Assembly (NCBI RefSeq): GCF_964204865.1
Contig: NC_135259.1
Location: 14,570,001-14,634,000, forward strand
Direction: 5' to 3'
DNA length: 64,000 nucleotides
From: Styela clava
Lineage: Eukaryota
Part shown: piece by piece, positions 14,525 through 31,300 of the stretch
How the letters are laid out: each line of letters opens with the position of its first letter
Numbering within the stretch: position 1 is the first letter of the stretch
The notes under the pieces: generated by a model
The model's database searches: none
The model's input: the letters and a program-made list of their open reading frames with translations, nothing else
Told to the model about the DNA's origin: nothing
Position numbers and translations under genes: made by a program

Positions 14525-15415
14525 ATGGCATCATCTGGTAAGGTCTATGGTGAAAAGAAACCAAAGACATTATGGGAGAAAATATGCGAAGATTTTGCAG
14601 CACAACGAGCAGAATTTGAAGATCAAGACTTTGATGACACAGCTTCATCTGCACCAACTGACATTACTCAATTTTCTGCCAGCCGTCACACACCAGTGGT
14701 GTATGGAAAAATGGTTCATGTCGCTCAAGTTGACAGCGATCTAACACAGGATTTTGATCCTGCCATGAGCCACCCAGCAGCAATTGGGCTGAGTTTACTC
14801 AGCAGGCCTAATAAAAAGCCTGCACATCCATCTCCTGCTCCACCAGATCCAAAGTTATGTCCAGCAAGGGACTACCTAGAAGCATATGTTTTTCCAACTC
14901 TGATACCAGCAATGATAGCTATGCTTCAGCAAGCGAAAGCAGAAAGGTGCTTTGAAAGAAAAAGGACTAAGTTTAATGCGTGTGACTTTTTGACAGAGTA
15001 TCTGTATAAACAAAACCCAGAAAAGAAAATTGGACGTGAAAATATGAATTTGTTAGATATTTCATTTGTGAAAGAACATCTCGTTGATCATCCGAGACCT
15101 CCTCTCCCACTCTCTCTCCTTTGGTCAGAACCCGAAGCCGCTGTTAAGATCCAGTCTTTCTGGCGTGGTCATCTTGTAAGAATAAGGCCAGAAGTGCAAG
15201 AAATGCGACAATGGCAGAATGAATGGCGAAATGAAAATAAAGATGTGAGGCAGCAGGTCAATGAATTCTGGCACCAACAAGAAAATAAAGATATTCCGCC
15301 AAGTAGTCCGCAACAGATACCAAATGTCTCGAAATCACCAAGGACACCAGAAAGGAAATCACGAAAAAGTAGTGCATCATCAGGGCGTAGAAGCAAATCT
15401 AATTTAAATGTGTAG
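14525..15415 (+). CDS. IQCK: IQ motif-containing protein K, 296 aa, single coding exon
   Basis: D/D-like region (PARDYLEAYVFPTL...CFERKRTKFNACDFLTEYLY), HPRPPLPLSLLWSE, IQ motif AAVKIQSFWRGHLVR, EVQEMRQWQ. Confidence 0.85.
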   Translation: MASSGKVYGEKKPKTLWEKICEDFAAQRAEFEDQDFDDTASSAPTDITQFSASRHTPVVYGKMVHVAQVDSDLTQDFDPAMSHPAAIGLSLLSRPNKKPAHPSPAPPDPKLCPARDYLEAYVFPTLIPAMIAMLQQAKAERCFERKRTKFNACDFLTEYLYKQNPEKKIGRENMNLLDISFVKEHLVDHPRPPLPLSLLWSEPEAAVKIQSFWRGHLVRIRPEVQEMRQWQNEWRNENKDVRQQVNEFWHQQENKDIPPSSPQQIPNVSKSPRTPERKSRKSSASSGRRSKSNLNV

Positions 15416-18558: not shown

Positions 18559-19137
18559 TTAATCCTCATCCTCTTCTTCATCACCTCCTCCAGAACCTTT
18601 CTTCATGTTTCGTCTCTTGACACGTCCTGGTCTTCCTCCACCGTATGGAGATCGCAGAGAGAAATCTATATGTTTCTGTGAATCCAATCGCACGATGAAA
18701 GAAGGAATATTAACGACCTGCTTTCGGACACGAATGTGACGTTGGCGGATTAAAACTCTTGCATGATGAATTGACTTTGCCAAACCCAGTTTGAAAACTT
18801 GTGTCTGAAGTCTTCTCTCCATAAAATCTTCAATCTTGAGACCAAGCACATAATCGAGTTTCATTTTCGTTTCATCCAATACCCCGACTCGTACAAGTCT
18901 ACGCAGGAGAGCATTTCCTTCAAACAACCTTCTTTGGTCTTTCTCGTCCAGGGTAAGGAGTTCACGAGCTGCCTTCCTGATTTTGGCCAAAAGAAGCTTT
19001 ACCCTCCATACTTCACGTTTATTTTTTAATCCATATTCACCAATAAGTTTTAACTCCTGGTCGAGCCGTGTTTTTTCGAACGGCCGCCTCGGTGTTACGT
19101 AGGTTTTACTACGAACTAAGCTCCTAGCGTGCGGCAT
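18559..19137 (-). CDS. RPS9: 40S ribosomal protein S9 (uS4), 192 aa, intronless
   Basis: [63 protein letters not shown], acidic C-terminal tail. AATAAA on minus strand at 18503-18508. Confidence 0.97.
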
Positions 19138-19796: not shown

Positions 19797-20470
19797 TAGC
19801 TAGATCGCAAGATAAAGAAATGTTTAAAAGAAAATATTTTGCTAATTTATGATTTGCGTTTTTTTATTTGCTATTTGCCTTCTAATTAATCAGTAATTAA
19901 TTTTTGCACATACCAAAAATATGAAAGTATACAAACAGTAAGGAAAAATATAAAATAATGCATTTAGGCGTGGAGAGAGACGCGATCATGGTTTTCGAGC
20001 AGCGTCATCTTTGAGGGAGTCTAACCGTAAATATATACTACTACATAGAATCATAAAAAAAAAAATTTTCGATTTTATTCTAATGCTACATAACAACAAA
20101 ACAAAAAGTATACCAATGAGTTCATGCTTTTTCAGACTATATTCATTACCTAAATAGATGCGCCCAACCTTGAATGGATCCAGATGGAATAGCGTAAATC
20201 GTCATGTGATGGAACATTTTTTTAGTTTTCCTATTTCGAAATCTGCTTCGAAGTAAACGAAATTGAGTAAAAAAGAGTTTGCTAAATTACATTGTACTTA
20301 TCTCAAACTTTTTAATATTAATCACATTTAATAATGTGATACTTATATTATTATATAAAAGCAAAATATAATTACCGGTTAATTGGTTCAGAATAAATAC
20401 CGACATGAGTAAATACATTTCTTAGAAACTTGCTGAAAATTATATTAACATAAGTGAGCGAAAAACGCTA

Positions 20471-20480
20471 GTCACGTGAT
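20471..20480. promoter_or_regulatory. E-box (GTCACGTGA) upstream of SRSF2
   Basis: gtcacgtgat ~110 bp upstream of the ATG in a CpG-containing stretch. A similar gtcatgtgat lies at 20201. Confidence 0.4.
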
Positions 20481-20583
20481 CCAGACCGTTCCGAGGCTTT
20501 TTTCTTGTATACGTGTGCCACCTTCCGTTGTTTTGTCTGCGAGTTGTGTCACTAGCTTTTATCCTGTATGATCTGGTTGCAAG

Positions 20584-23500
20584 ATGTCTCACTCACAGCA
20601 GAGTAGAGGGCCGCCAAATATAGAGGGAATGTACTCATTGAAAGTGGACAATTTAACGTACAGGACGTCGCCAGAAACATTGAAAAGATCGTTCGAAAAG
20701 TACGGCAAAGTGGGAGATATTTATATCCCACGGGACAGGTTAGTTGCTTAATTGTTCATTTCATTCAAAAAATTTATTCTCTGATATACACCACAAAGAA
20801 AAATATTTGTTTGGCGTCAAATTTATAATTTTAGGCATAGTGTAATTCTTTGTCTATGGCAATTTAGACATACTGACATACCAGTTAACAGAAAAATGCC
20901 AAGCTAACCTAATTTTCAAATCTTTACTTATCGTTATCACTGTTATATCTAATTTGGGGAGGTTTAACATGCTCATTTTTAAAAATATCTTTGACAGATT
21001 AGGTATGCCGTTCTTGTCTATTCAGCCATTTATAATATTCATATTCAATATTCAAGGGCCACGAAGGAAAGCAGAGGATTTGCGTTTGTTCGATTTTATG
21101 ATAAACATGATGCTGAAGATGCAATGGATAGCATGGATGGAAAAACACTGGATGGTAGGGAGCTGAGAGTTCAGATGGCGAGGTGAGGCTAGGATAGAAA
21201 ACAAATGTTCGTTATACCTAATCAATGGGTCTTACTACTTACTGAATACAGCGCGAAACACTGCAAAGAGCGTGAAACAGGAAAACAGCGCGAAACAGGA
21301 AACCAGAGGGGAACAGCGCAAAACAGGAGACGTGGTTATTACCACTGCGTTATTACCACGTTGCCTCTCGCCATGGTTTTTTTACGCTATTTCGCTATAT
21401 CCACAAGGTTATGTATCGGATTTTAGGTCAACATGCGAAATTTTAAATTATTTTTTTTTTTATCCAACCACAATCCTCAAGCCAAATCAATCAAAACTGT
21501 ATGCATATGGAAAATGTTCCAAATCACGGTAACCAAAATGTGTCACCAGCAGGGGCAGACCTGCCATTACACCCTACATGCCTTGGTTTGTGTTTCAATT
21601 TGCTGTCGTGGTACCCCAACTTGAAAAAAAGAGGTACCATAACTCTTTGCAGAATATTTTTCTGCTTTGCGCTGTTCCCTCTGTTTTGTGCGCTGTATTC
21701 AGTAAGTAGTGGGACCGCCTGATCAATTCATTGAATTTTGTTATTTTAACAGAAACTTCGTGTCGAAGCAAGTATAAACTTTCACATCAAATGCGGTTGG
21801 CTGGTGGGCGGCGGATGCTGTCAGCAAGTGTTGCAGTGGTGCAGCGATGCTGAGTTTAATTCATATATTTAAAACAGTACCATAAAGCAAGCTGTAAACC
21901 ATGCCGCCGCTATTTATTTTTCATATTACAGTAATACACATTGCTAATTAGAGAAAAAGCAACTCAAAATTATTGATCGAAATTATTTCTTTTATCAGAT
22001 TAAATCTATCAAAAATATACAGGGAAACGCCGCCCACCCCTGACTTCATTGCCGCATTTTACTGAAATGCATCTCAAAATAGATATTACTAGACATGGCA
22101 ACGTATATGGAAAAAATTGAAATATTCATTGGCCTTGTTTCGTTCAAATAGTTTCCATTATTAATTGTTATATAGCTATACATCTGCATGCATGTGGGTT
22201 CATTTTAATATTTTTTTATTAAAGCTAATTTGAAGAGATTCAAAAACTATCAGCAGGAAGGCATACAAAGTGTCGTCTATAATTTTAAAGTAATCAATTT
22301 ACATACATTGACTTGCAAAATGGGTAAAAAATTCTATTCCTAAATAAGTGCAAATTAGTTTTGATCGAGCAATGGTCAATGGTGCCTGGTTTCGGCTAAC
22401 ACTTTTTTCCACTTCGTGTTAAGCCAACAACCGTATATTATTAGATATGGACGACCACAAGAACAACATTACAACAATAGACGAGGACCACCTCAACGTT
22501 ATGGAGGAGGGGGAGGATGGTATGGAGGTGGTGGCGGCGGCGGCGGCGGTGGTTATGGAGGTGGTGGTGGATACAGAGGTGGAGGTGGACGGTACAGCAG
22601 AAGGTACCATCTTTTGATAGACATAAAACGTTTTGTTTCTTTCCAGTTGACTGATTGTTTGTTACTTGTAGCAGTGATGTAGGATGTAGTTGTGGTGTGT
22701 TTCTGTTAATGTCGAAGTCGTAATTCCAAACTTCCTGGAGTCGAAGTAAAAATTTCTAAGCACTCTTAGCAGTCAATACTTGTTGTTTTTTCATGCTTAA
22801 TGTTTTTATATTTAGATCCAGATCACCACGACGAAGATCATATTCCAGATCCAGGTCTCGATCACGTGACAGGGACCGAAGAAGGAGAAGTTACTCAAGA
22901 AGCAAAAGCCGAAGTCCTTCAAAAAGCAGATCCAGGTCTAGGAGTCCGGTTGAACAAGAGGAACGGAATGGAAGGTTTGTTTGAAATTCTAATTTCCCAC
23001 AACGATACTCCATTCACATTGAGTTGTGATCAGGGCTGGGAAGCCGGAGCTGGAGTCGGAGCCTGGAGCCATGGAGCCGTTACATTTTGATGGAGCCGGA
23101 GTCGGAGTTGGAGCCAAGCTTTCCATAACAGATGGAGCTGGAGCTACCAAAAATTTAGTGGCTCCAGGCTCCAGCTCCTAAATATCTCCTTTTTTTGTTT
23201 TTCAAATTTATAATTTTTTTCTGATAGCGTTACAAATGATAAAATCTTTTCTGTTCAGCTTATAATTCATTTTAAAAATTTTAGTTCCTAATATTTTTTA
23301 AAAAGTTTCCAGTTATTCTGTATGTTTGAAAGTTTAGTATCAAAATTTGAAGCGGTTCGCTTTTATCCAAATTTTGATTCTCATTTCCACTAAGCTGCAA
23401 TTTTTCATGATTGCGGTCAAGCTCAAAAACCCTAATGGCCAGGGATTTTCGAAGAAGTGATTTTGGAATTTCCATGTAACATATTATGATTTTTTCGTGG

Positions 23501-25264
23501 CGTTGAATATCCAATCCATTTCAAATGTCTTCAATTCTGTTCAACTTATCTCGAGATTGAGTCGTTTTACGACAAAAGAAAGGTTTAACTACTCCAAAAT
23601 GCACCGCAGCAGTCACCTATCATAAAAATGTATGGCAAAGTGCCCCATTATATCTTGTTTTGATCCATAACATAGCATGTTCTGGAGAAAAGTCTCATCA
23701 ATTTCCGTTGTTATTTTTTGAATATATAAGAGGTATATCACGAGTAAGATTGATTGCGTTTAGATTTATTTTAGTGACTGTATAATTTTCAAAGTCAACC
23801 GGTAAATAATATGTCGTAGGCAAAAAAAATAATGAGATTAACAAGGCATTTTTTTTAGCTGTTGGGAGTCTCCTAGAACAAAGTTTATAGTGTTTTCCGT
23901 TTCATTTTAGTATCTTATAATAACTCTCCAATGTGGAAATTCGGCTTGCGAATTGACTTCCCTATTTATCTTCAACATCTCATCGCTGATAATTATGAAA
24001 ACGCCTCGATTCTAGAACCAACTTTTGGCCTGATTTGGGAGAGGGGGACGGCATCTAATTGGGTGATGATGGTAATTTCCATTATTTTGGGTCTGCTTAT
24101 TCAATTTGTACCATAAAATACTGCCTCCCCGTTAGGCCAGTTTAAATTATCATGAGTTGAAGGGCTATTGCCGTTACTATCACATGTGCGTTGCATTTCG
24201 TGAAAAGCCTCAATTGTTTTCGTCGCCATAAACATTAGGCCATAACATCTTTTATTTCAGTGTTTATTTTTCCCTTAATCACAATTTCTCAAGACATATG
24301 TTTTGTGTCACGCACTATATTTGTGAGAAAACGAGTTATTACATAATCATCGGTGATGAAATTCTAAGATAAATAAAGAAGTCAATACGCAAACCAAATT
24401 TTCCTGATTAAAAAGCGACATTATGAAATACTAAAAATAAAACAGAAAACACCATAAGTTTTGCTTTAGAATGGCCCACGACAGATTGTATTTGGCCGGC
24501 ATGATTGCCAGTTATGTTGAACACAATTAAATTAAAATAAAAAGACAATTATTATGGGTTAAATATTATGTGGTAGAAAAAGTCATTTTGAGCTATTTTA
24601 CCGAATGCGCAAACGCTGCGACCATTCCAGAAGCCGATTTTCCTTCCCGTCTTATTGTGGGGTTATATGTAAAACCCTTATATGCTGGGTAGACCGATTC
24701 GCATATAAAAATACAGCATATAATAACTCTCAGTGGATTCGCAAGTTACATGCAGGAACAAAAAGGAATTAACATGACACCGACTTGAAGGGTGTTTACA
24801 GCCTAAATAACATGCCACACTTAGAAAACAATTAGCAAAATGCGTTATTGGGCTGCACTACTGATAATGGCTATGGAGCCGGAGCTGGAGCCAGCTCCGG
24901 CATAAAAAAATGAAGCTCCGGAGCCGGAGTTGGAGCTATAGATTGAATACCCTGCGACTCCGGAGCTGGAGTCGGAGCCATCATGATTTCGAACCAGCTC
25001 CCCAGCCCTGGTTGTGATGCAACGGATTCAGACTCTGATTTGGTATCGCTTCCATGTCACTTTTACCAAGTCTATTTAATTCTGTTTTTCTTTCACTTCT
25101 ATGCCCATGATGTATTTTTTCTGTCTATATCCTCGTTGGGCCAAAAGATACCAGGTATCATTCAACATGCGTATGAGTTGCGTTGTTGAATTATCTAAAA
25201 AATATTTTATTTTATATCTTACAGCAAATCGAGATCAAGATCACCTGAGCGAGAGCGAGATTGA
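20584..25264 (+). CDS. SRSF2: Serine/arginine-rich splicing factor 2 (SC35), 212 aa; exons 20584-20738, 21057-21182, 22445-22603, 22816-22974, 25225-25264
   Basis: Spliced translation gives ..[85 protein letters not shown].., then a Gly-rich linker and RS domain. All four introns are GT-AG, phase 2; total 639 nt. Confidence 0.93.
21228..21716. mobile_element. Long-TIR foldback-type MITE in SRSF2 intron 2
   Basis: ggtcttactacttactgaatacagcgc ... gcgctgtattcagtaagtagtgggacc. Internal acagcgcgaaaca repeats are mirrored at the other end. TSD not resolved. Confidence 0.75.
21796..22042. mobile_element. Degenerate hAT-like MITE in SRSF2 intron 2
   Basis: ggtgggcggcg ... cgccgcccacccctg inverted ends. 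Confidence 0.45.
23031..25010. mobile_element. Non-autonomous hAT element (1980 bp) in SRSF2 intron 4, family D
   Basis: TIRs cagggctgggaagc / gctccccagccctg. Perfect 8-bp TSD gttgtgat. Subterminal GGAGCC/GGAGCT arrays at both ends. No intact transposase. Confidence 0.9.
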
Positions 25265-26194
25265 GAAGTTCAGAACTTCATTGAAGAAAAAAATTGTCCC
25301 TATTACTGGATGAACTATCAGAAGCCAGCTGTCTGTTGCATAAGTTGATTTGTCAGCCAGAAGTGCAGCGCAGCTGGTAATTTTTATACATAATTTCCGT
25401 ATGTGCTGTAAACTAAGATAAATTGAACAATAACTGTTCGTGCTAGATGTTTAAGGGTTTAGAACTTCGTAAATCTCCAGCCAACTTTGCTGCTATCTGA
25501 ATTCTGAATATTGGTCTAGTATTTATTAAAGTATACTAGCGCCTCCATATGCCACCCAAGGAATATATCCCCTATTAATTTTTAATGACGAAATTTTCGT
25601 GCCAAATATCAACACTTTTTTGATAACAATATATCATGATCTTGCAAGAACATAGACCAGGTATATATGACTTTAAAGTAATGAAAATATGACAAACTTG
25701 TAGAGAAGTCCTTAGATTTTAAAATTAATTTGTACAAGTAAATTGCATTTATTTCTGTCAAATAAATTGTGATTCCTCACAAAGAGGGACATATTAAATG
25801 GATAGTTTTGAGATAGAAATCATAAGCTTGTTTGGAATATTTCCTCTGCAGTATGAAACTGATCAAGGCTTATCAACAAAAAATAATGAAACGATGTTTA
25901 GCAATTTGAAATTTTATTCATTTACATTGAAAATAGTTTGCCTTGGTGTTTGTATTATATGCTCCTGTATAAAATTGAACCATGTTTTATTTTGTTGTTG
26001 TTAACCTTTATTTTGCTTGCTTACATTGTTTTTTACTCCTTAAAACAGCGAATCGAGAGCGGTGATTAGCGGTCCTGTGAAATAGTGGCGAGTAGCAGTG
26101 TATTTGGCAAGAGTATGCTGTCCTGTGTAACCAGTTAAACTGTTTCGGTCATTGCCAGTTTTGCTTCGGTCCTCTTTTTTTATGGATGGAGTCT

Positions 26195-26354
26195 GTGGGT
26201 CCAGTGTATTGCCGAGTTCCGGGGTCCTGTCGTCGGTGGGTCCAGTGTATTGCTGAGTTCCGGGGTCCTGTCGTCGGTGGGTCCAGTGTATTGCGGAGTT
26301 CCCGGGTCCTGTCATCGGTGGGTCCAGTGTATTGCTGAGTTCCGGGGTCCTGTC
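26195..26354 (+). repeat. GC-rich 41-bp tandem repeat, ~3.9 copies
   Basis: Unit gtgggtccagtgtattgcNgagttccggggtcctgtcgtcg starts at 26195, 26236, 26277 and 26318. Confidence 0.95.
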
Positions 26355-26451
26355 CAGAGCCAGTTAATTAAAAGTTTGCGTATAGCGATTACCAGCATCT
26401 GCTTCTAGTTCCTAGTGCCTGTTTTGTCGAGTAAGTTGCAGGGATACCTTG

Positions 26452-26582
26452 TACTTTGTGAGTATGGAAGTTATCCTGTGGAAGAAATCTTGGTGCAAGG
26501 AGAAACATGGTAATATCTTTTACTTTGTGAGTATGGAAGTTATCCTGCGGAAGAAGTCTTGCTACAAGGAGAAACGTGGTAA
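26452..26582 (+). repeat. 69-bp tandem duplication containing duplicated 5' splice-site-like motifs
   Basis: tactttgtgagtatggaagttatcctg... at 26452 and 26521. Confidence 0.9.
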
Positions 26583-28373
26583 ATTCAGGGCTTTGACATC
26601 TTCATTAAACCTTTTTTAAACCTTTTTCCTAATAATTAATATTCGAGATTGCTAGCTAGCATTAACCTTTGGGATAAAGTTCTTTATTTTTTTTTTTGTT
26701 CACTTGACTGTCTTTTCTCCCAATTAGCTCCTGTCTGTTGGAAATTTATGAAGAAGCCAGGTAGGGGGTCTGGATTGACTTCTGGAACTTGTAAATAGAA
26801 ATCGAAGAATTTTCATTAAATACCCCCATGACACCTTTGCATTAACAAATTATGCAGGAATATCGATAGCTTCATTATTTGCCCAAATTTAATAGACCAG
26901 TAATCTGAATAATAATGCAGTAAAATTAAGATGTTGGCTACATACATATAAGTGACTTGATTTAAGAGGCCCTCTTGTTTGGTGAGCTTAACTGTGCATC
27001 GTGTACAGTGTTTTTATTTCTTGTATGAGGACCGTCATTCTATATACCTGAATTGCATTGGAGCATACATACCCACAGGCAACTGCATTATTCATTAAAC
27101 TAAACTTTTGCCTGAACACATTGCGATCGTCTACTGGGACGAGCGGTTGTTTATTGAAGTGAAGGTCTGTTGAGAATGCTACGTCCGCAGGAGTTGTATG
27201 CCTATAGTCACATGTTAGTTGTCCGGATCGACTGATAGTTTTGAGAAAACAACTTCGGGCTTCTTGCTGTCTTATTTCAGCTTTTCTCGTATGGACCTCT
27301 GCTTTTCTCGTATGGACCTCTGAAGAGTTGTGAGAATTTGGGCAAAGCTTCCCTGTGTGTGCCTGTTAAGAGAGTTGTGCGAGTGGGAACCTCTTATAAT
27401 CTTTTTCCAGATTTTATAATTTCTGGTATGGACCTTGGAAGAGTTGTAAAAAAGGTGACAAAGCTACTTTAATGAAAGCTTTACTAGGCGTCTTTTGGAA
27501 TTCATTCTGCTTGTTCTCCATGCTCTGTGTATAAAATCCTGTAATGGGTTTGTATATAGGCTGATGAAATATACCATGGCACTAAAATTGCTTACTGAGT
27601 TTTTGAAAGTCTGGGGGCTTGGTCACTTATGCTCTACTGAAAAGAACCTACAATATTTCATGGTGTTTCACTGGTGTCCAAATGACTTTTAGTTTTGGAT
27701 TTCCAAACTCACTCCCATTTGATTTTTGTGGAAGTTGTGGAGTCTGCATAGAAAGTGATAGCATAACACACTGACTTTTAAGTCTACAAATCTAGTGGTT
27801 TTACAATTGGCTAACAGCACATAGATGTCCACCTTTTAGCTATGGTTCTGTAATTTACCAATCAATAAAACACCCAAGCTTGAGAAACTGGACTTGAGAT
27901 TGGTGGCAATCCTATCATATGCGACAGGTCTAATACCTAAATAGGTAAACTTATGCCTCTAATACAAATTAGTCGCATTACACCCCCTATTTTGACTTGC
28001 ACCCACCCTGTTCTTGGGAGTTTACGTTTAAAGCAGAGGTTCCCAAACTTCATTGGCCATGTCTAATATTTCTTACATGGTTGATAACTAAATTGCTGCT
28101 TTGTGTAATACCGATACGTATAGTTGGGACACAGTCAGGAGCCATTTCCTCGGCTCCTATTCTGGTTTTAATTTGCTTCTCAAGCCTTTCATTAACAAAA
28201 ATTCACACACTGGTTGCAATTGATCTTTATTTCCAGCCTTTTAAATTCTAGGGAATAAAATCTTTACATCTATCGTAACCACAATATTTTACACTTTATT
28301 CCCAAACACTCCAAAAATATTAAGTAACTCTGTGGCCACTGGTGCCGGCATCTCAACTAGTATTTTCAATGCT

Positions 28374-31300
28374 TCATCTTAAGGCAGATACATGCTTGTT
28401 GAGCTGTTATACAAATATCAATGATTAGAAATGTCAAATGTTCTTCACTTGGGTCATTAGGTTGGTGTTTCATGTGAGACAGATAGTTGTAGCTGGACAT
28501 GCTTACCTTTTCAAAGTTGAGAATCTGCTCTATGAAATAGTCAGCATATCCTCGTTCTATTTTTGTATCTGCTATATGTATCATATCCTGCAAACAGAAA
28601 GATTTCCGTTATTGTCAGTTGAGTTTTTCAAATTGAATCTACATTACATATTTCACAGTCCTCACTATTTCCTTCGTACCTATTACAAAGCAATCTTGCT
28701 AGGCCTCGACAACTTAATGGTAAAAGCTAGAAATAAGAATTAAGTGACTTCATCATTATGTATCCAACCTACCCCATCAATGTAGAAGTCAACTTCAAGT
28801 TGATTTTGTTCTTGTGATGTTTGAGAGTCAGACTGACTGTTCTTCATTTTGTGCTGTATATAATCAAATAAATACCGAATTATATGATTTTACTGACTTG
28901 ACTTTGGAATAGCAAAAAATATGGTCATATAATATTAATCATACTGATAAAGAACCATACGCTCGACAACCAATAACTCTAAACAGTCCATGCAGATGTA
29001 AATGCACGACAAATCCTTTATTTTGAAGTTCTTATATAGCAGTAGCTGCTCATTCAGATAGAAATGCGTATAAAAATGATTCAACTTTACTCCAAATTTG
29101 AATCATTTCACTGTTGGGAATATCTTGAATGCTCAACACTTACAAACCATTAAAATAAAGTTTTTGAAATATATAAATTCAAACCTTCAGACACATAAGC
29201 TCGGCTCTGAGATCATGTGGTGGCATGTCCAGGAAATCAGCAAGTTTATCCACAGGCATTGTAGAATATAATTTTAAATAACTACGGATTGTTGGCAACA
29301 GTGCTTGCTGATCAACTTCTTCAAGGAAAACCTAGATTGAAATTTCAATTTTATTTTAGAGTATATATATAACAACTACTGAACAGGCAAGGCATCTAGG
29401 ACATTGCATGTGAATTGGAAATAGTCTCTTCATGCTCGGTTCTGCCCACTTGAAAAAGACTATTAAAGCTACATATTTATAATAATGCTGCAATGAATGT
29501 AATAAAGTATTGCATGTTCAAATTATGTTCCATCGTTTGGGTTTCTGTGGATCCAATGCAAGGGCACTGTAGCAAGAACGAAGATGACTGTTCTAAGTAA
29601 TTCAAGAGTCTTCATATATACAGTATGTTAGACTGAAGTGAATCCTACCGCAAGCTGATGGTTCATGGGTTCCTTGTGAAGGTTGACAGGACCAGCTCCA
29701 TAATTTGGTGCCACAGGAGAAACAAACTTGGGACAAGCAAATGAAAATGCCTCTTCAAAAGCCCCTTTCTCCCTGTTAATTAAAACACACAGGCATTCAA
29801 TTTTGGATTAATGGAAAGCTAATGAGATTTGTAGAAATTATCCTTTTCAACAAAAATACATACCCTCTCTGCATTCTGGCTCTTTTTTCCTCGCCAGTTT
29901 TTTCTATCATTTGTCTTGAAAGAGATTCATCAATTCTAACTGGATAAAGAGTTACACATATTGCCAGAAGATTGTACATCTGATCGGTTTGTTTGGAAAT
30001 CTGTTGAAGAAATAAAATCCATTTAATGAGAGCAGTCGGAAATTATTGGCTGTTAGTTGTCAAGCCTCGATACAAAATTGGAAAACAGCAAAGACATGTC
30101 CAAAAAAATAATTCAGTGCTCGCTGCTTTAAGTATACCTGGATAAATTATTAATTTGTGAGCCTTGCACTAAAACGCTCTTTCTTTTTCATTCAATTTAT
30201 TGAAACAAGTAATGCTAGCTGACAGCTTCCCTTAAAATTCCCTGCTTTTAAGTGAAAGTTATATATAGAATCAATGATCAATTTGTATCCAATCCATTCG
30301 AAACCCATGGGGGATAATTATGTGTGAGAGGATAGCTGACTCCCCTCCGCTGTAGGGTAGTTGAGCGGTTACAGCTTGCTCCTCCATCAAGTCCTTGCAT
30401 CTGAAACAAATAACTAGTAACTGATCTCATACCCCACATGGACTGGTAAACAGACAAGGCCGAGGTTGGCCATCCATGGAATAAATAGTATAATTTACCA
30501 TATCAATCTTGAATTGACTGGAACGTTGTTGCAAAGAGTTTTTTGTCCTTTGTATGTGGGTTAATATGCTTGAGAAGGTGTTTATAGCATCTTGATACCT
30601 GTGAAAGCAAACAAAATTGAGTATAATAACTTGACCAAGTAATTCAAACAAATTTATTTGATCCATAGCATTTGTGAAGCTTTTAATCTTAACAGTTTAA
30701 AAATTGATTATGTGATAAACACACTAATCCGTACATGCAACCATCTACATTTTCAGATAGTTTGTTGCAGGGCTGGGGAGCTGAAGTCAGTGTCTGGAGC
30801 CATGACATTTTGATGGAGCTGGAGCTGTGCTTATCATAATAGCTGGTGATACCAGATTATTTAGTGGCTCCAGCTCCTAACCATCTGATTATTTTTTCAC
30901 ATTTATGATTTTGTAATACGCTATATAAATATTAAACTCTAACCTTTTCAGCCTAAGCTGGAGCCACAGGTTGAATATACTGTAGCTCTGAAGCCGGAGC
31001 TATTGTAATTTGAAAACCCGATCCCCAGCCCTGGTTTGTTGTGAACCAGTGGCTTTTTATTACAAATAAATAATCGATGATGATAGAGATCTACTTCTAG
31101 ACCGAGACTGACATTTTGTTGAGTTTTTTGTTTGTACTAAGTATTGGGATTCGGAAATAAATCTAGTCTAGTAATGAGGTAAAAACCTACCTTCTCATCA
31201 TCAGATATGAGAATCCAATATAATAGTAAGTTGTGATCTGACATTCAGGTACTCTGGCCATGACTGAACTCTGGAAATGAAAAATAGTCAAAATCATTCA

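What the first reader, a model, noticed from the sequence alone, without database searches (positions are those of the whole stretch)
25264..27870. Candidate SRSF2 autoregulatory tail: chain of non-coding exons downstream of the stop codon, competing with a proximal poly(A) site
Seen: a donor ctg|GTAATT at 25377, 112 nt after the stop, and an AATAAA at 25761 inside the would-be intron. A long pyrimidine tract plus AG ends at 26048. Further acceptor/donor pairs define non-coding exons ~26049-26430, 26728-26760 (ag|...ccag|GTAGGG), 27281-27329 and 27411-onward, with a distal AATAAA at 27864. No credible ORF lies here. Known: mammalian SRSF2 limits its own level by promoting 3'UTR splicing that triggers NMD, and junctions >50-55 nt past a stop are NMD marks. 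Inference: this lineage has a more elaborate, multi-exon version of that switch (proximal polyadenylation = stable mRNA; splicing into the tail = decay).
Basis: partly seen in the sequence, partly recalled or inferred. Interest (0 to 1): 0.75.

Follow-up and report, generated by a model that had tools for sequence, protein, structure and literature searches.

The report
SRSF2 gene with one optional 3'UTR intron

Summary
Splice-like motifs here are only about 1.6-1.7 times as dense as in the whole window. The gene is a five-exon SRSF2 orthologue with its stop at 25262-25264.

RNA contigs from four runs were laid on the region.
- All four runs show the exon 4-exon 5 junction, so they hold spliced RNA.
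- In 3 of 3 organism-A runs, the contigs that leave the coding exons run unspliced through 25377-26048 and past the AATAAA at 25761.
- The predicted junction 25376^26049 appears in one low-depth contig of one run (X10).
- Junctions 26430^26728, 26760^27281 and 27329^27411 appear in 0 of 4 runs. Unspliced contigs bridge those sites, and one contig runs past the "distal" AATAAA.

The exon after the intron holds 10 of the window's 12 plus-strand GTCCWGT motifs (UCCAGU/SSNG type).

Verdict: this is probably a one-intron 3'UTR switch of the mammalian SRSF2 kind. It is a new member of a known kind. Autoregulation and decay are inferred, not shown, and the multi-exon tail is unsupported. Scan note s1-810868 had already flagged the minisatellite on this same window.

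The parts
20584..20738 (+). SRSF2 coding exon 1 (ATG at 20584; first half of the RRM)
   Evidence: Sequence and ORF. Pfam RRM_1, E 2.2e-06. Best solved-structure match is SRSF2 2lea, E 2.4e-20, with 35 of 46 aligned residues identical.
21057..21182 (+). SRSF2 coding exon 2 (second half of the RRM)
   Evidence: RRM_1, E 2.9e-11. Best solved-structure match is SRSF2 2kn4, E 2.9e-18, with 35 of 40 aligned residues identical.
22445..22603 (+). Coding exon 3 (Gly/Tyr-rich hinge)
   Evidence: Read from the sequence. Its last 30 letters are the loose end in front of exon 4 in X1, X2 and X10 (table 7).
22816..22974 (+). Coding exon 4 (RS domain)
   Evidence: Read from the sequence. The joint 22972->25223 (cut +2), GT..AG, is present in 4 of 4 runs (table 5).
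25225..25264 (+). End of the coding sequence in exon 5 (..[12 protein letters not shown], stop TGA 25262-25264)
25265..25376 (+). Constitutive first 112 nt of the 3'UTR, ending at donor CTG|GTAATT
   Evidence: The 25 letters 25352-25376 occur once in the 377-Mb genome.
25377..26048 (+). Facultative 672-nt 3'UTR intron: retained in the main RNA contigs, removed in one contig
   Evidence: Unspliced contigs: X2 record 11 (25223-26243), X1 record 3 (25223-25962), X6 records 23-25, X10 record 10 (25356-25556). Spliced contig: X10 record 9, 25352-25376 + CGAATC + 26056-26222.
25761..25766 (+). AATAAA inside the intron; candidate proximal poly(A) signal, use not shown
   Evidence: Contigs of X1, X2 and X6 run past it. 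It lies inside the 150 nt skipped by X6 joint 25697->25848.
26049..26840 (+). Distal 3'UTR, the terminal exon of the spliced form. The 3' end is only approximate (about 26.7-26.84 kb); candidate signals are ATTAAA at 26604 and 26815.
   Evidence: Contigs tile it (X2 record 15, 26325-26677; X6 record 25, 25848-26140). X6 has no depth from bin 26837 onward. Hexamers. Single copy in the genome.
26072..26353 (+). Cluster of 10 GTCCWGT motifs (UCCAGU / UCCUGU, SSNG type), 2 of them upstream of the tandem array
   Evidence: 10 of the 12 plus-strand copies in 64 kb lie here. SSNG count for 26049-26430 is 46 against 29.6 +/- 3.6 in shuffles; 0 of 300 shuffles reach it.
26191..26354 (+). 41-nt minisatellite, 4 copies, 94% matches; each unit carries UCCAGU and UCCUGU
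26444..26582 (+). 69-nt tandem duplication (2 copies, 90%), each copy with GTGAGT and GGTAA donor-like motifs; role unknown
   Evidence: X2 record 15 crosses it unspliced.
26728..27870 (+). Best read as space between convergent genes, with only thin unspliced coverage.
   Evidence: none of these joints in any of 4 runs; unspliced X1 records 4, 5 and 7 bridge the sites; decayed 116-nt duplication.

Best explanation
The window holds the SRSF2 (SC35) orthologue of an AT-rich animal genome; earlier scan notes call it the sea squirt Styela clava, which I did not verify. Its 3'UTR contains one facultative intron (25377-26048, 672 nt) that starts 112 nt after the stop codon. Most mRNA keeps this intron and carries a long 3'UTR reaching at least about 26.2-26.7 kb, possibly with earlier ends inside the intron. 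A minor form removes the intron and joins 25376 to 26049.

The exon behind the intron opens with a dense, poorly structured cluster of ten GUCCWGU sites. Eight of them lie in a 41-nt minisatellite. They match the SSNG/UCCAGU type of ligand bound by the SRSF2 RRM.

Inferred mechanism, by analogy with mammalian SC35: when SRSF2 is abundant it occupies this cluster and activates the weak upstream 3' splice site (TTAAAACAG|C). The intron is then removed. The resulting exon junction, more than 50-55 nt downstream of the stop, marks the mRNA for nonsense-mediated decay, which lowers SRSF2 output.

Shown here: gene identity, the exon structure, the retained-intron form, the existence of the junction, and the motif cluster. 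Inferred: SRSF2 binding, splicing activation, and decay.
For: - Gene identity. The exon 1 and exon 2 peptides hit RRM_1. Their best solved-structure matches are SRSF2 (2lea, E 2.4e-20; 2kn4, E 2.9e-18).
- The runs hold RNA. Joint 22974^25225 is present in 4 of 4 runs.
- Retained form. Contigs run from the coding exons through the intron in X1, X2 and X6, 3 of 3 organism-A runs from three studies (table 8).
- Spliced form. X10 record 9 joins 25352-25376 to CGAATC (= 26049-26054) and then 26056-26222, exactly at the predicted GT and AG (tables 5, 5c, 8).
- The junction is not a repeat or retrocopy artefact. Its 25-letter 5' side is unique in the genome, and 26049-26700 is single copy.
- Geometry. 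The stop-to-junction distance is 112 nt.
- Motif cluster. 10 of 12 plus-strand GTCCWGT in the 64-kb window lie at 26072-26347, against 6 on the whole minus strand. SSNG in 26049-26430 is 46 against 29.6 +/- 3.6, with 0 of 300 shuffles reaching it. The two top-scoring 300-nt windows on the plus strand (37 each) lie here.
- Accessibility. The block is not more folded than shuffles (z +1.28), so the motifs could be accessible.
- Literature. Mammalian SC35 activates splicing of its terminal 3'UTR intron through multiple SC35 sites in the downstream exon, and the spliced forms are NMD targets (PMC2831310: abstract, introduction and one discussion section read). SSNG and UCCAGU as SRSF2 RRM ligands come from passages of PMC10465970.
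Against: - The junction rests on one contig of depth 4 in 1 of 4 runs. Only 25 letters lie on its 5' side, below the tool's own 31-letter rule for bridging.
- That run is labelled organism B but is letter-identical to the window over 534 letters in four of its five listed pieces. It comes from the same study as X1, so carry-over between libraries cannot be excluded.
- None of the three organism-A runs shows the junction, although contigs drop rare forms.
- The motif statistics lean on a tandem duplication. One 41-nt unit alone is not significant (7 SSNG against 4.2; 21 of 300 shuffles reach it).
- Unlike the mammalian element, there is no stem-loop signal.
- No relative's genome could be compared, so conservation is unknown.
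- Whether exon-junction-dependent NMD works in this animal was not tested.
Confidence: 0.5

Rival explanations
1. This is a plain long 3'UTR with alternative poly(A) sites. The rare 25376^26049 junction is splicing noise or an artefact, and the 41-nt minisatellite is a neutral tandem duplication that happens to contain SSNG-type words.
For: - The main contigs in 3 of 3 organism-A runs are unspliced.
- The junction is seen once, at depth 4, with a 25-letter side.
- Splice-like motifs are near background density.
- A single repeat unit is not significantly SSNG-rich.
- A 150-nt segment carrying the proximal AATAAA is missing from one X6 contig, which points to weak constraint on this stretch.
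Against:
- Two further GTCCWGT copies (26072, 26120) lie outside the tandem array.
- The arrangement mirrors the experimentally dissected mammalian SC35 terminal intron and exon (PMC2831310).
Confidence: 0.3
2. One reading: a chain of four non-coding exons (26049-26430, 26728-26760, 27281-27329, 27411 to about 27885) spliced behind the stop and ending at the AATAAA at 27864. On this view the chain is visible only when NMD is blocked.
For: All motifs are present. Thin coverage exists out to 28.2 kb in X1 and X2 (table 2). NMD targets are rare, and contigs drop rare forms.
Against: - Junctions 26430^26728, 26760^27281 and 27329^27411 appear in 0 of 4 runs.
- Unspliced contigs bridge every one of these sites (X2 record 15; X1 records 4 and 5).
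- X1 record 7 (27868-28262) runs past the supposed distal end.
- X6 has no depth in any bin from 26837 to 28600.
- Two of the 'exons' are copies of one decayed duplication.
Confidence: 0.06
3. The distal part (about 26.7-28.2 kb) belongs to something else: read-through or an extended 3'UTR of the convergent minus-strand eIF3L-like gene, or an independent non-coding transcript.
For: - A minus-strand gene (Paf67/eIF3L family) ends near 28217, with an AATAAA on the minus strand at 28226-28231.
- Its intron 28404-28506 is spliced in X1 and X2.
- X1 record 7 links 27868 to 28262.
- Contig strand is not informative.
Against: Coverage there is thin and continuous on both sides. No capped start or splice junction of its own is seen. 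This rival explains only the distal part, not 25265-26700, which is physically joined to the SRSF2 coding exons in X2 record 11.
Confidence: 0.1

Closest known systems
Mammalian SRSF2 (SC35) autoregulation by 3'UTR splicing coupled to NMD. Sureau et al. 2001 is not held in the library and is known here through PMC2831310 and PMC7764535. Dreumont et al. 2009 is PMC2831310.
   Same: - An intron lies inside the 3'UTR and is retained in the main mRNA but removed in a minor form.
- The junction lies far enough behind the normal stop to mark it as premature.
- Several SRSF2-type sites sit in the exon directly downstream of that intron.
   Different: - No 3'UTR cassette exon is seen here.
- The candidate enhancer is a 41-nt minisatellite plus two loose copies of GUCCWGU, not a 60-nt element in a conserved stem-loop. 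The fold z-score here is +1.28.
- The motifs resemble the high-affinity NMR ligand, whereas the mammalian sites are described as low-affinity.
- The coding region here has four introns.
- There is no functional evidence here.
3'UTR-intron AS-NMD feedback in other RNA-binding proteins (SRSF1, hnRNP A2/B1), as tabulated and described in PMC7764535
   Same: The logic is the same: splicing of a 3'UTR intron places an exon junction behind the normal stop.
   Different: The genes and binding motifs differ. Those cases have knock-down or over-expression evidence.
Ancient SRSF5 poison exon / retained intron (Lareau and Brenner 2015, PMC4379411)
   Same: Unproductive splicing of an SR gene outside vertebrates.
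   Different: That event lies in a coding-region intron and was traced by ESTs across animals and fungi. SRSF2 is not discussed in the main text of that paper (0 mentions; SC35 appears only in the reference list).
Competition between splicing and intronic polyadenylation (composite terminal exons), a general concept recalled from memory and not taken from any call
   Same: An AATAAA lies inside the facultative intron.
   Different: Use of that site is not shown. Contigs read through it in 3 of 3 organism-A runs, and one contig of X6 lacks the segment that carries it.

Membership tests
SRSF2 (SC35) orthologue | A single N-terminal RRM that is closest to SRSF2 among RRM proteins | tested here: met
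   Exons were searched one at a time. RRM_1 hits. The best PDB matches are SRSF2 (2lea E 2.4e-20, 35 of 46 identical; 2kn4 E 2.9e-18, 35 of 40 identical), ahead of SRp46 and other RRM proteins.
SRSF2 (SC35) orthologue | C-terminal Arg/Ser-rich domain | tested here: met
   Translations of exons 4 and 5 are RS dipeptide-rich. No Pfam model applies.
SRSF2-type 3'UTR AS-NMD switch | An intron wholly within the 3'UTR that is spliced in some transcripts and retained in others | tested here: met
   Retained in contigs of 4 of 4 runs. Spliced in one contig of 1 of 4 runs (X10; depth 4; 25-letter side). Support for the spliced form is thin.
SRSF2-type 3'UTR AS-NMD switch | Exon junction more than 50-55 nt downstream of the stop codon | tested here: met
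   The stop ends at 25264 and the junction follows 25376, a distance of 112 nt.
SRSF2-type 3'UTR AS-NMD switch | SRSF2-responsive enhancer sites in the exon downstream of the intron | tested here: inconclusive
   The motif cluster is present (10 of 12 GTCCWGT; SSNG count reached by 0 of 300 shuffles). Binding and enhancer activity cannot be tested here, and the statistic leans on a tandem repeat.
SRSF2-type 3'UTR AS-NMD switch | The spliced isoform is stabilised when NMD is blocked | not testable with these tools
   No NMD-inhibition data could be reached. Read laying and the look-up of sequencing runs are capped at one call each.
SRSF2-type 3'UTR AS-NMD switch | Excess SRSF2 protein increases the unproductive splicing | not testable with these tools
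   Needs an experiment.
SRSF2-type 3'UTR AS-NMD switch | 3'UTR cassette (poison) exon, as in mammals | tested here: not met
   No joints flank 26728-26760 or 27281-27329 in 0 of 4 runs, and unspliced contigs bridge them. Absence from contigs is weak evidence.
SRSF2-type 3'UTR AS-NMD switch | Strong sequence conservation of the regulatory 3'UTR region among related species | not testable with these tools
The other locus tools hold prokaryotes and viruses only. X10 ('organism B') is letter-identical and so says nothing about conservation.
   0 of 3 junctions in 0 of 4 runs. X1 record 7 (27868-28262) passes the supposed end.

The most novel reading that the evidence does not exclude
The ten-copy GUCCWGU cluster, grown by minisatellite expansion, is a purpose-built concentration sensor for SRSF2. 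It switches the mRNA between a stable intron-retaining form and an NMD-targeted spliced form. If the genome is a tunicate, as earlier notes say, the '3'UTR intron plus SRSF2 sites in the next exon' design would then predate the tunicate-vertebrate split. Alternatively it was re-invented with a different enhancer. Either way, a fast-evolving repeat would be doing the job of a vertebrate ultraconserved element.
Probability: 0.25. Interest if true: 0.6.

Novelty: new member of a known kind. Interest (0 to 1): 0.4.

Why it matters
SR-protein self-limitation by unproductive splicing is well studied in mammals. For SRSF2, its evolutionary depth is not treated in the papers I could read: there is no SRSF2 in the main text of PMC4379411, and an ascidian survey (PMC10573349) reports no differential splicing events in SRSF genes. 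None of the titles and abstracts listed by three literature searches concerned an invertebrate or tunicate SRSF2 3'UTR intron.

A non-vertebrate SRSF2 with the same layout would give a small, testable model. Its candidate enhancer is a simple repeat of the known RRM ligand. That would let one ask how site number sets the feedback threshold, and whether such switches are inherited or repeatedly rebuilt.

The negative result also matters. Chains of splice-like motifs in AT-rich 3' flanks are close to chance, and here they were not borne out by RNA.

Tried and rejected
- Transposon or retrocopy origin of the downstream block: rejected. 26049-26700 and 25690-25860 each match only themselves in the 377-Mb genome.
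- A known structured RNA in 20000-29000: none found in Rfam at E up to 0.1.
- A stem-loop like the mammalian enhancer: not seen. The MFE is -107.3 kcal/mol, and 91 of 100 shuffles fold at least as well.
I did not try it again or by another route.
- The spliced SRSF2 protein was never assembled. For that reason search for homologous proteins, the search of protein representatives and structure prediction were not used on this gene.
- Depth figures are one value per contig, and the tool warns against ranking parts of a gene by them. I use them only as weak hints for where most transcripts end.
- Sureau et al. 2001 is not held. I cite it only through PMC2831310 and PMC7764535.
- PMC2689934 (fly NMD targets) was read in passages. 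Apart from a single mention that I did not see in the shown passages, it says nothing on SC35.
- The species name comes from earlier scan notes. I only checked that the assembly size (376.8 Mb) is compatible with the published k-mer estimate of 406.87 Mb and the 340.42-Mb assembly for Styela clava (passages of PMC7540406).

Full report
**What is in the sequence.** The plus strand carries a five-exon gene. The exons are 20584-20738, 21057-21182, 22445-22603, 22816-22974, and 25225 up to the stop TGA at 25262-25264.

- The exon 1 and exon 2 peptides hit Pfam RRM_1 (E 2.2e-06 and 2.9e-11).
- Their best solved-structure matches are human SRSF2. For exon 1 this is 2lea, E 2.4e-20, with 35 of 46 aligned residues identical. 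For exon 2 it is 2kn4, E 2.9e-18, with 35 of 40 identical.
- Exons 4 and 5 encode an RS domain.

So the gene is an SRSF2 orthologue.

**Are the motifs more than chance?** Hardly. With a simple consensus count, 25265-28200 has 8 donor-like and 4 acceptor-like sites. That is 2.72 and 1.36 per kb, against 1.70 and 0.80 per kb for the plus strand of the whole window. The minus strand of the same stretch also has 8 donor-like sites. Sequence alone therefore cannot carry the exon-chain claim.

**RNA evidence.** The look-up of sequencing runs listed 16 runs, with coded names and RNA only guessed. I laid four of them on 22700-28600: X1, X2 and X6 (organism A, three studies) and X10 (organism B, same study as X1). 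All are Logan contigs.

The exon 4-exon 5 junction (22972->25223, cut +2, GT..AG) is present in 4 of 4 runs, so the runs do hold spliced RNA. The exon 3 end appears as the loose end in front of exon 4 in X1, X2 and X10.

The contigs that leave the coding exons continue unspliced into the proposed intron:
- X2 record 11 covers 22814-22972 joined to 25223-26243.
- X1 record 3 covers 25223-25962.
- X6 record 23 covers 25223-25697, with records 24 and 25 tiling on to 26140.

The intron-retaining form is therefore the one assembled in 3 of 3 organism-A runs, and it reads through the AATAAA at 25761.

**The one supported junction.** X10 record 9 (201 letters, depth 4) consists of three parts: 25352-25376, then the six letters CGAATC, then 26056-26222.
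- The six letters equal 26049-26054, so the join is 25376^26049.
- The 25-letter 5' side occurs once in the 377-Mb genome.
- 26049-26700 is single copy, so a repeat or a processed copy does not explain the contig.

Caveats:
- The 5' side is shorter than the 31 letters the tool asks for.
- The depth is 4, next to an unspliced X10 contig (25356-25556) of depth 4.2.
- X10 shows no differences from the window over 534 letters in four of its five listed pieces.
- Its few differences in the fifth piece are shared with organism-A runs.
- It may therefore be the same species, or carry-over within study P1.

**The rest of the chain.** Junctions 26430^26728, 26760^27281 and 27329^27411 appear in 0 of 4 runs. 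Unspliced contigs bridge the sites: X2 record 15 (26325-26677), X1 record 4 (26705-27246) and X1 record 5 (27324-27555). X1 record 7 (27868-28262) runs past the 'distal' AATAAA at 27864. X6 has no depth in any bin from 26837 to 28600.

Per-contig depths fall by roughly ten-fold or more beyond about 26.0-26.3 kb, and again beyond about 26.7-26.84 kb. The tool warns that such figures cannot rank parts of a gene, so they are only a weak hint. They suggest that most transcripts end within or shortly after the intron region and that the long form ends near 26.7-26.84 kb. The candidate signals are ATTAAA at 26604 and 26815.

Contigs drop rare forms, and NMD targets are rare by nature, so the absences are not proof.

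**Surroundings.** On the minus strand a Paf67/eIF3L-family gene converges on SRSF2.
- Its exon peptides hit PF10255 (E 1.1e-15 and 3.2e-04).
- Its intron 28404-28506 is spliced in X1 and X2 (CT..AC on the plus strand).
- Its transcript ends near 28217, behind a minus-strand AATAAA at 28226-28231.

The stretch from 26.85 to 28.2 kb is thus the space between two convergent 3' ends.

**The block behind the intron.** 26049-26430 is GC-rich (0.52, against 0.29 for the intron).
- It holds 46 SSNG words, against 29.6 +/- 3.6 in dinucleotide shuffles. None of 300 shuffles reaches that count.
- The two top-scoring 300-nt windows on the plus strand lie here.
- Ten of the window's twelve plus-strand GTCCWGT motifs lie at 26072-26347. 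Eight are in the 41-nt x 4 minisatellite (26191-26354). Two (26072, 26120) lie in unique sequence upstream of it. The whole minus strand has six.
- UCCAGU occurs once per repeat unit.
- A review states that SRSF2 prefers SSNG and that its RRM was solved with UCCAGU (passages of PMC10465970).

Caveat: the statistic leans on the tandem duplication. One unit alone is unremarkable (21 of 300 shuffles reach its count). The block folds no better than shuffles (z +1.28).

**Mechanism and comparison.** In mammals, high SC35 activates splicing in its own 3'UTR, and the spliced forms are NMD targets. The terminal retained intron is activated through several SC35 sites in the downstream exon (PMC2831310: abstract, introduction and one discussion section read). 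The layout here matches that design:
- a retained 3'UTR intron;
- a junction 112 nt behind the stop;
- SRSF2-type sites at the start of the next exon;
- an acceptor with a purine-interrupted tract (TTAAAACAG|C) that would plausibly need an enhancer.

I therefore favour the same feedback here, with confidence 0.5. Binding, activation and decay are inferred.

Differences from mammals are that no cassette exon is seen, the candidate enhancer is a minisatellite rather than a conserved stem-loop, and there are four coding introns.

The proximal AATAAA may offer a third outcome, an end inside the intron, but its use is not shown. In addition, one X6 contig skips 25698-25847, with AAA in its place, and that segment holds the site. 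The segment is single copy, so this looks like an indel allele.

**Novelty.** A Ciona study reports one SRSF2 gene per species and no differential splicing events in SRSF genes (passages of PMC10573349). None of the titles and abstracts listed by three searches concerned a tunicate or invertebrate SRSF2 3'UTR intron; I did not read those papers in full. Earlier scan notes name the genome Styela clava. I only found the assembly size compatible with that.

I class the finding as a new member of a known kind, of moderate interest.

Noticed in passing
window 18559-19137 (-): An uninterrupted 192-aa ORF for ribosomal protein S9 (Pfam Ribosomal_S4 and S4). It lies head-to-head with SRSF2, with about 1.4 kb between the two start codons. 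Whether it is the functional intronless gene or a retrocopy was not examined.
   Followed up: no
window 14525-15415 (+): A single 296-aa ORF with an IQ motif and a weak Dpy-30 motif hit.
   Followed up: no
window about 23025-25012 (SRSF2 intron 4): An insert of about 2 kb is bounded by GGAGCYGGAGC-rich terminal repeats. RNA contigs of X1, X2 and X6 end at 25010-25014 and continue into different unrelated sequences. Joints 23051->24957 and 23265->24984 also occur. This looks like a multi-copy terminal-inverted-repeat transposon.
   Followed up: partly
window 25698-25847: One X6 contig (depth 44) replaces these 150 nt with AAA, while another X6 contig (depth 58) keeps them. The segment is single copy and carries AATAAA 25761 and ATTAAA 25793. 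It is a probable indel allele that removes the candidate proximal poly(A) signals.
   Followed up: partly
window 28217-29331 (-): A convergent eIF3L/Paf67-family gene (PF10255, E 1.1e-15). Its last intron, 28404-28506, is spliced in X1 and X2, and there is no coverage at all in X6.
   Followed up: partly
window 22445-22603 (+): Exon 3 encodes a long Gly/Tyr tract (..[34 protein letters not shown]) between the RRM and the RS domain. From memory, this is longer than the short Gly hinge of vertebrate SRSF2.
   Followed up: no
window 22672-22745: Another first-stage note (s1-810936) proposes a poison cassette exon here. In one search the main contigs of X1, X2 and X10 join exon 3 directly to exon 4. 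My laid stretch began at 22700, so the candidate was only half covered and is not excluded as a rare form.
   Followed up: partly
window 26444-26582: A 69-nt tandem duplication just behind the motif cluster. Each copy carries GTGAGT and GGTAA donor-like motifs, giving four U1-like sites that are not spliced in X2 record 15. They might help define the terminal exon or damp nearby poly(A) signals; this is pure speculation.
   Followed up: no
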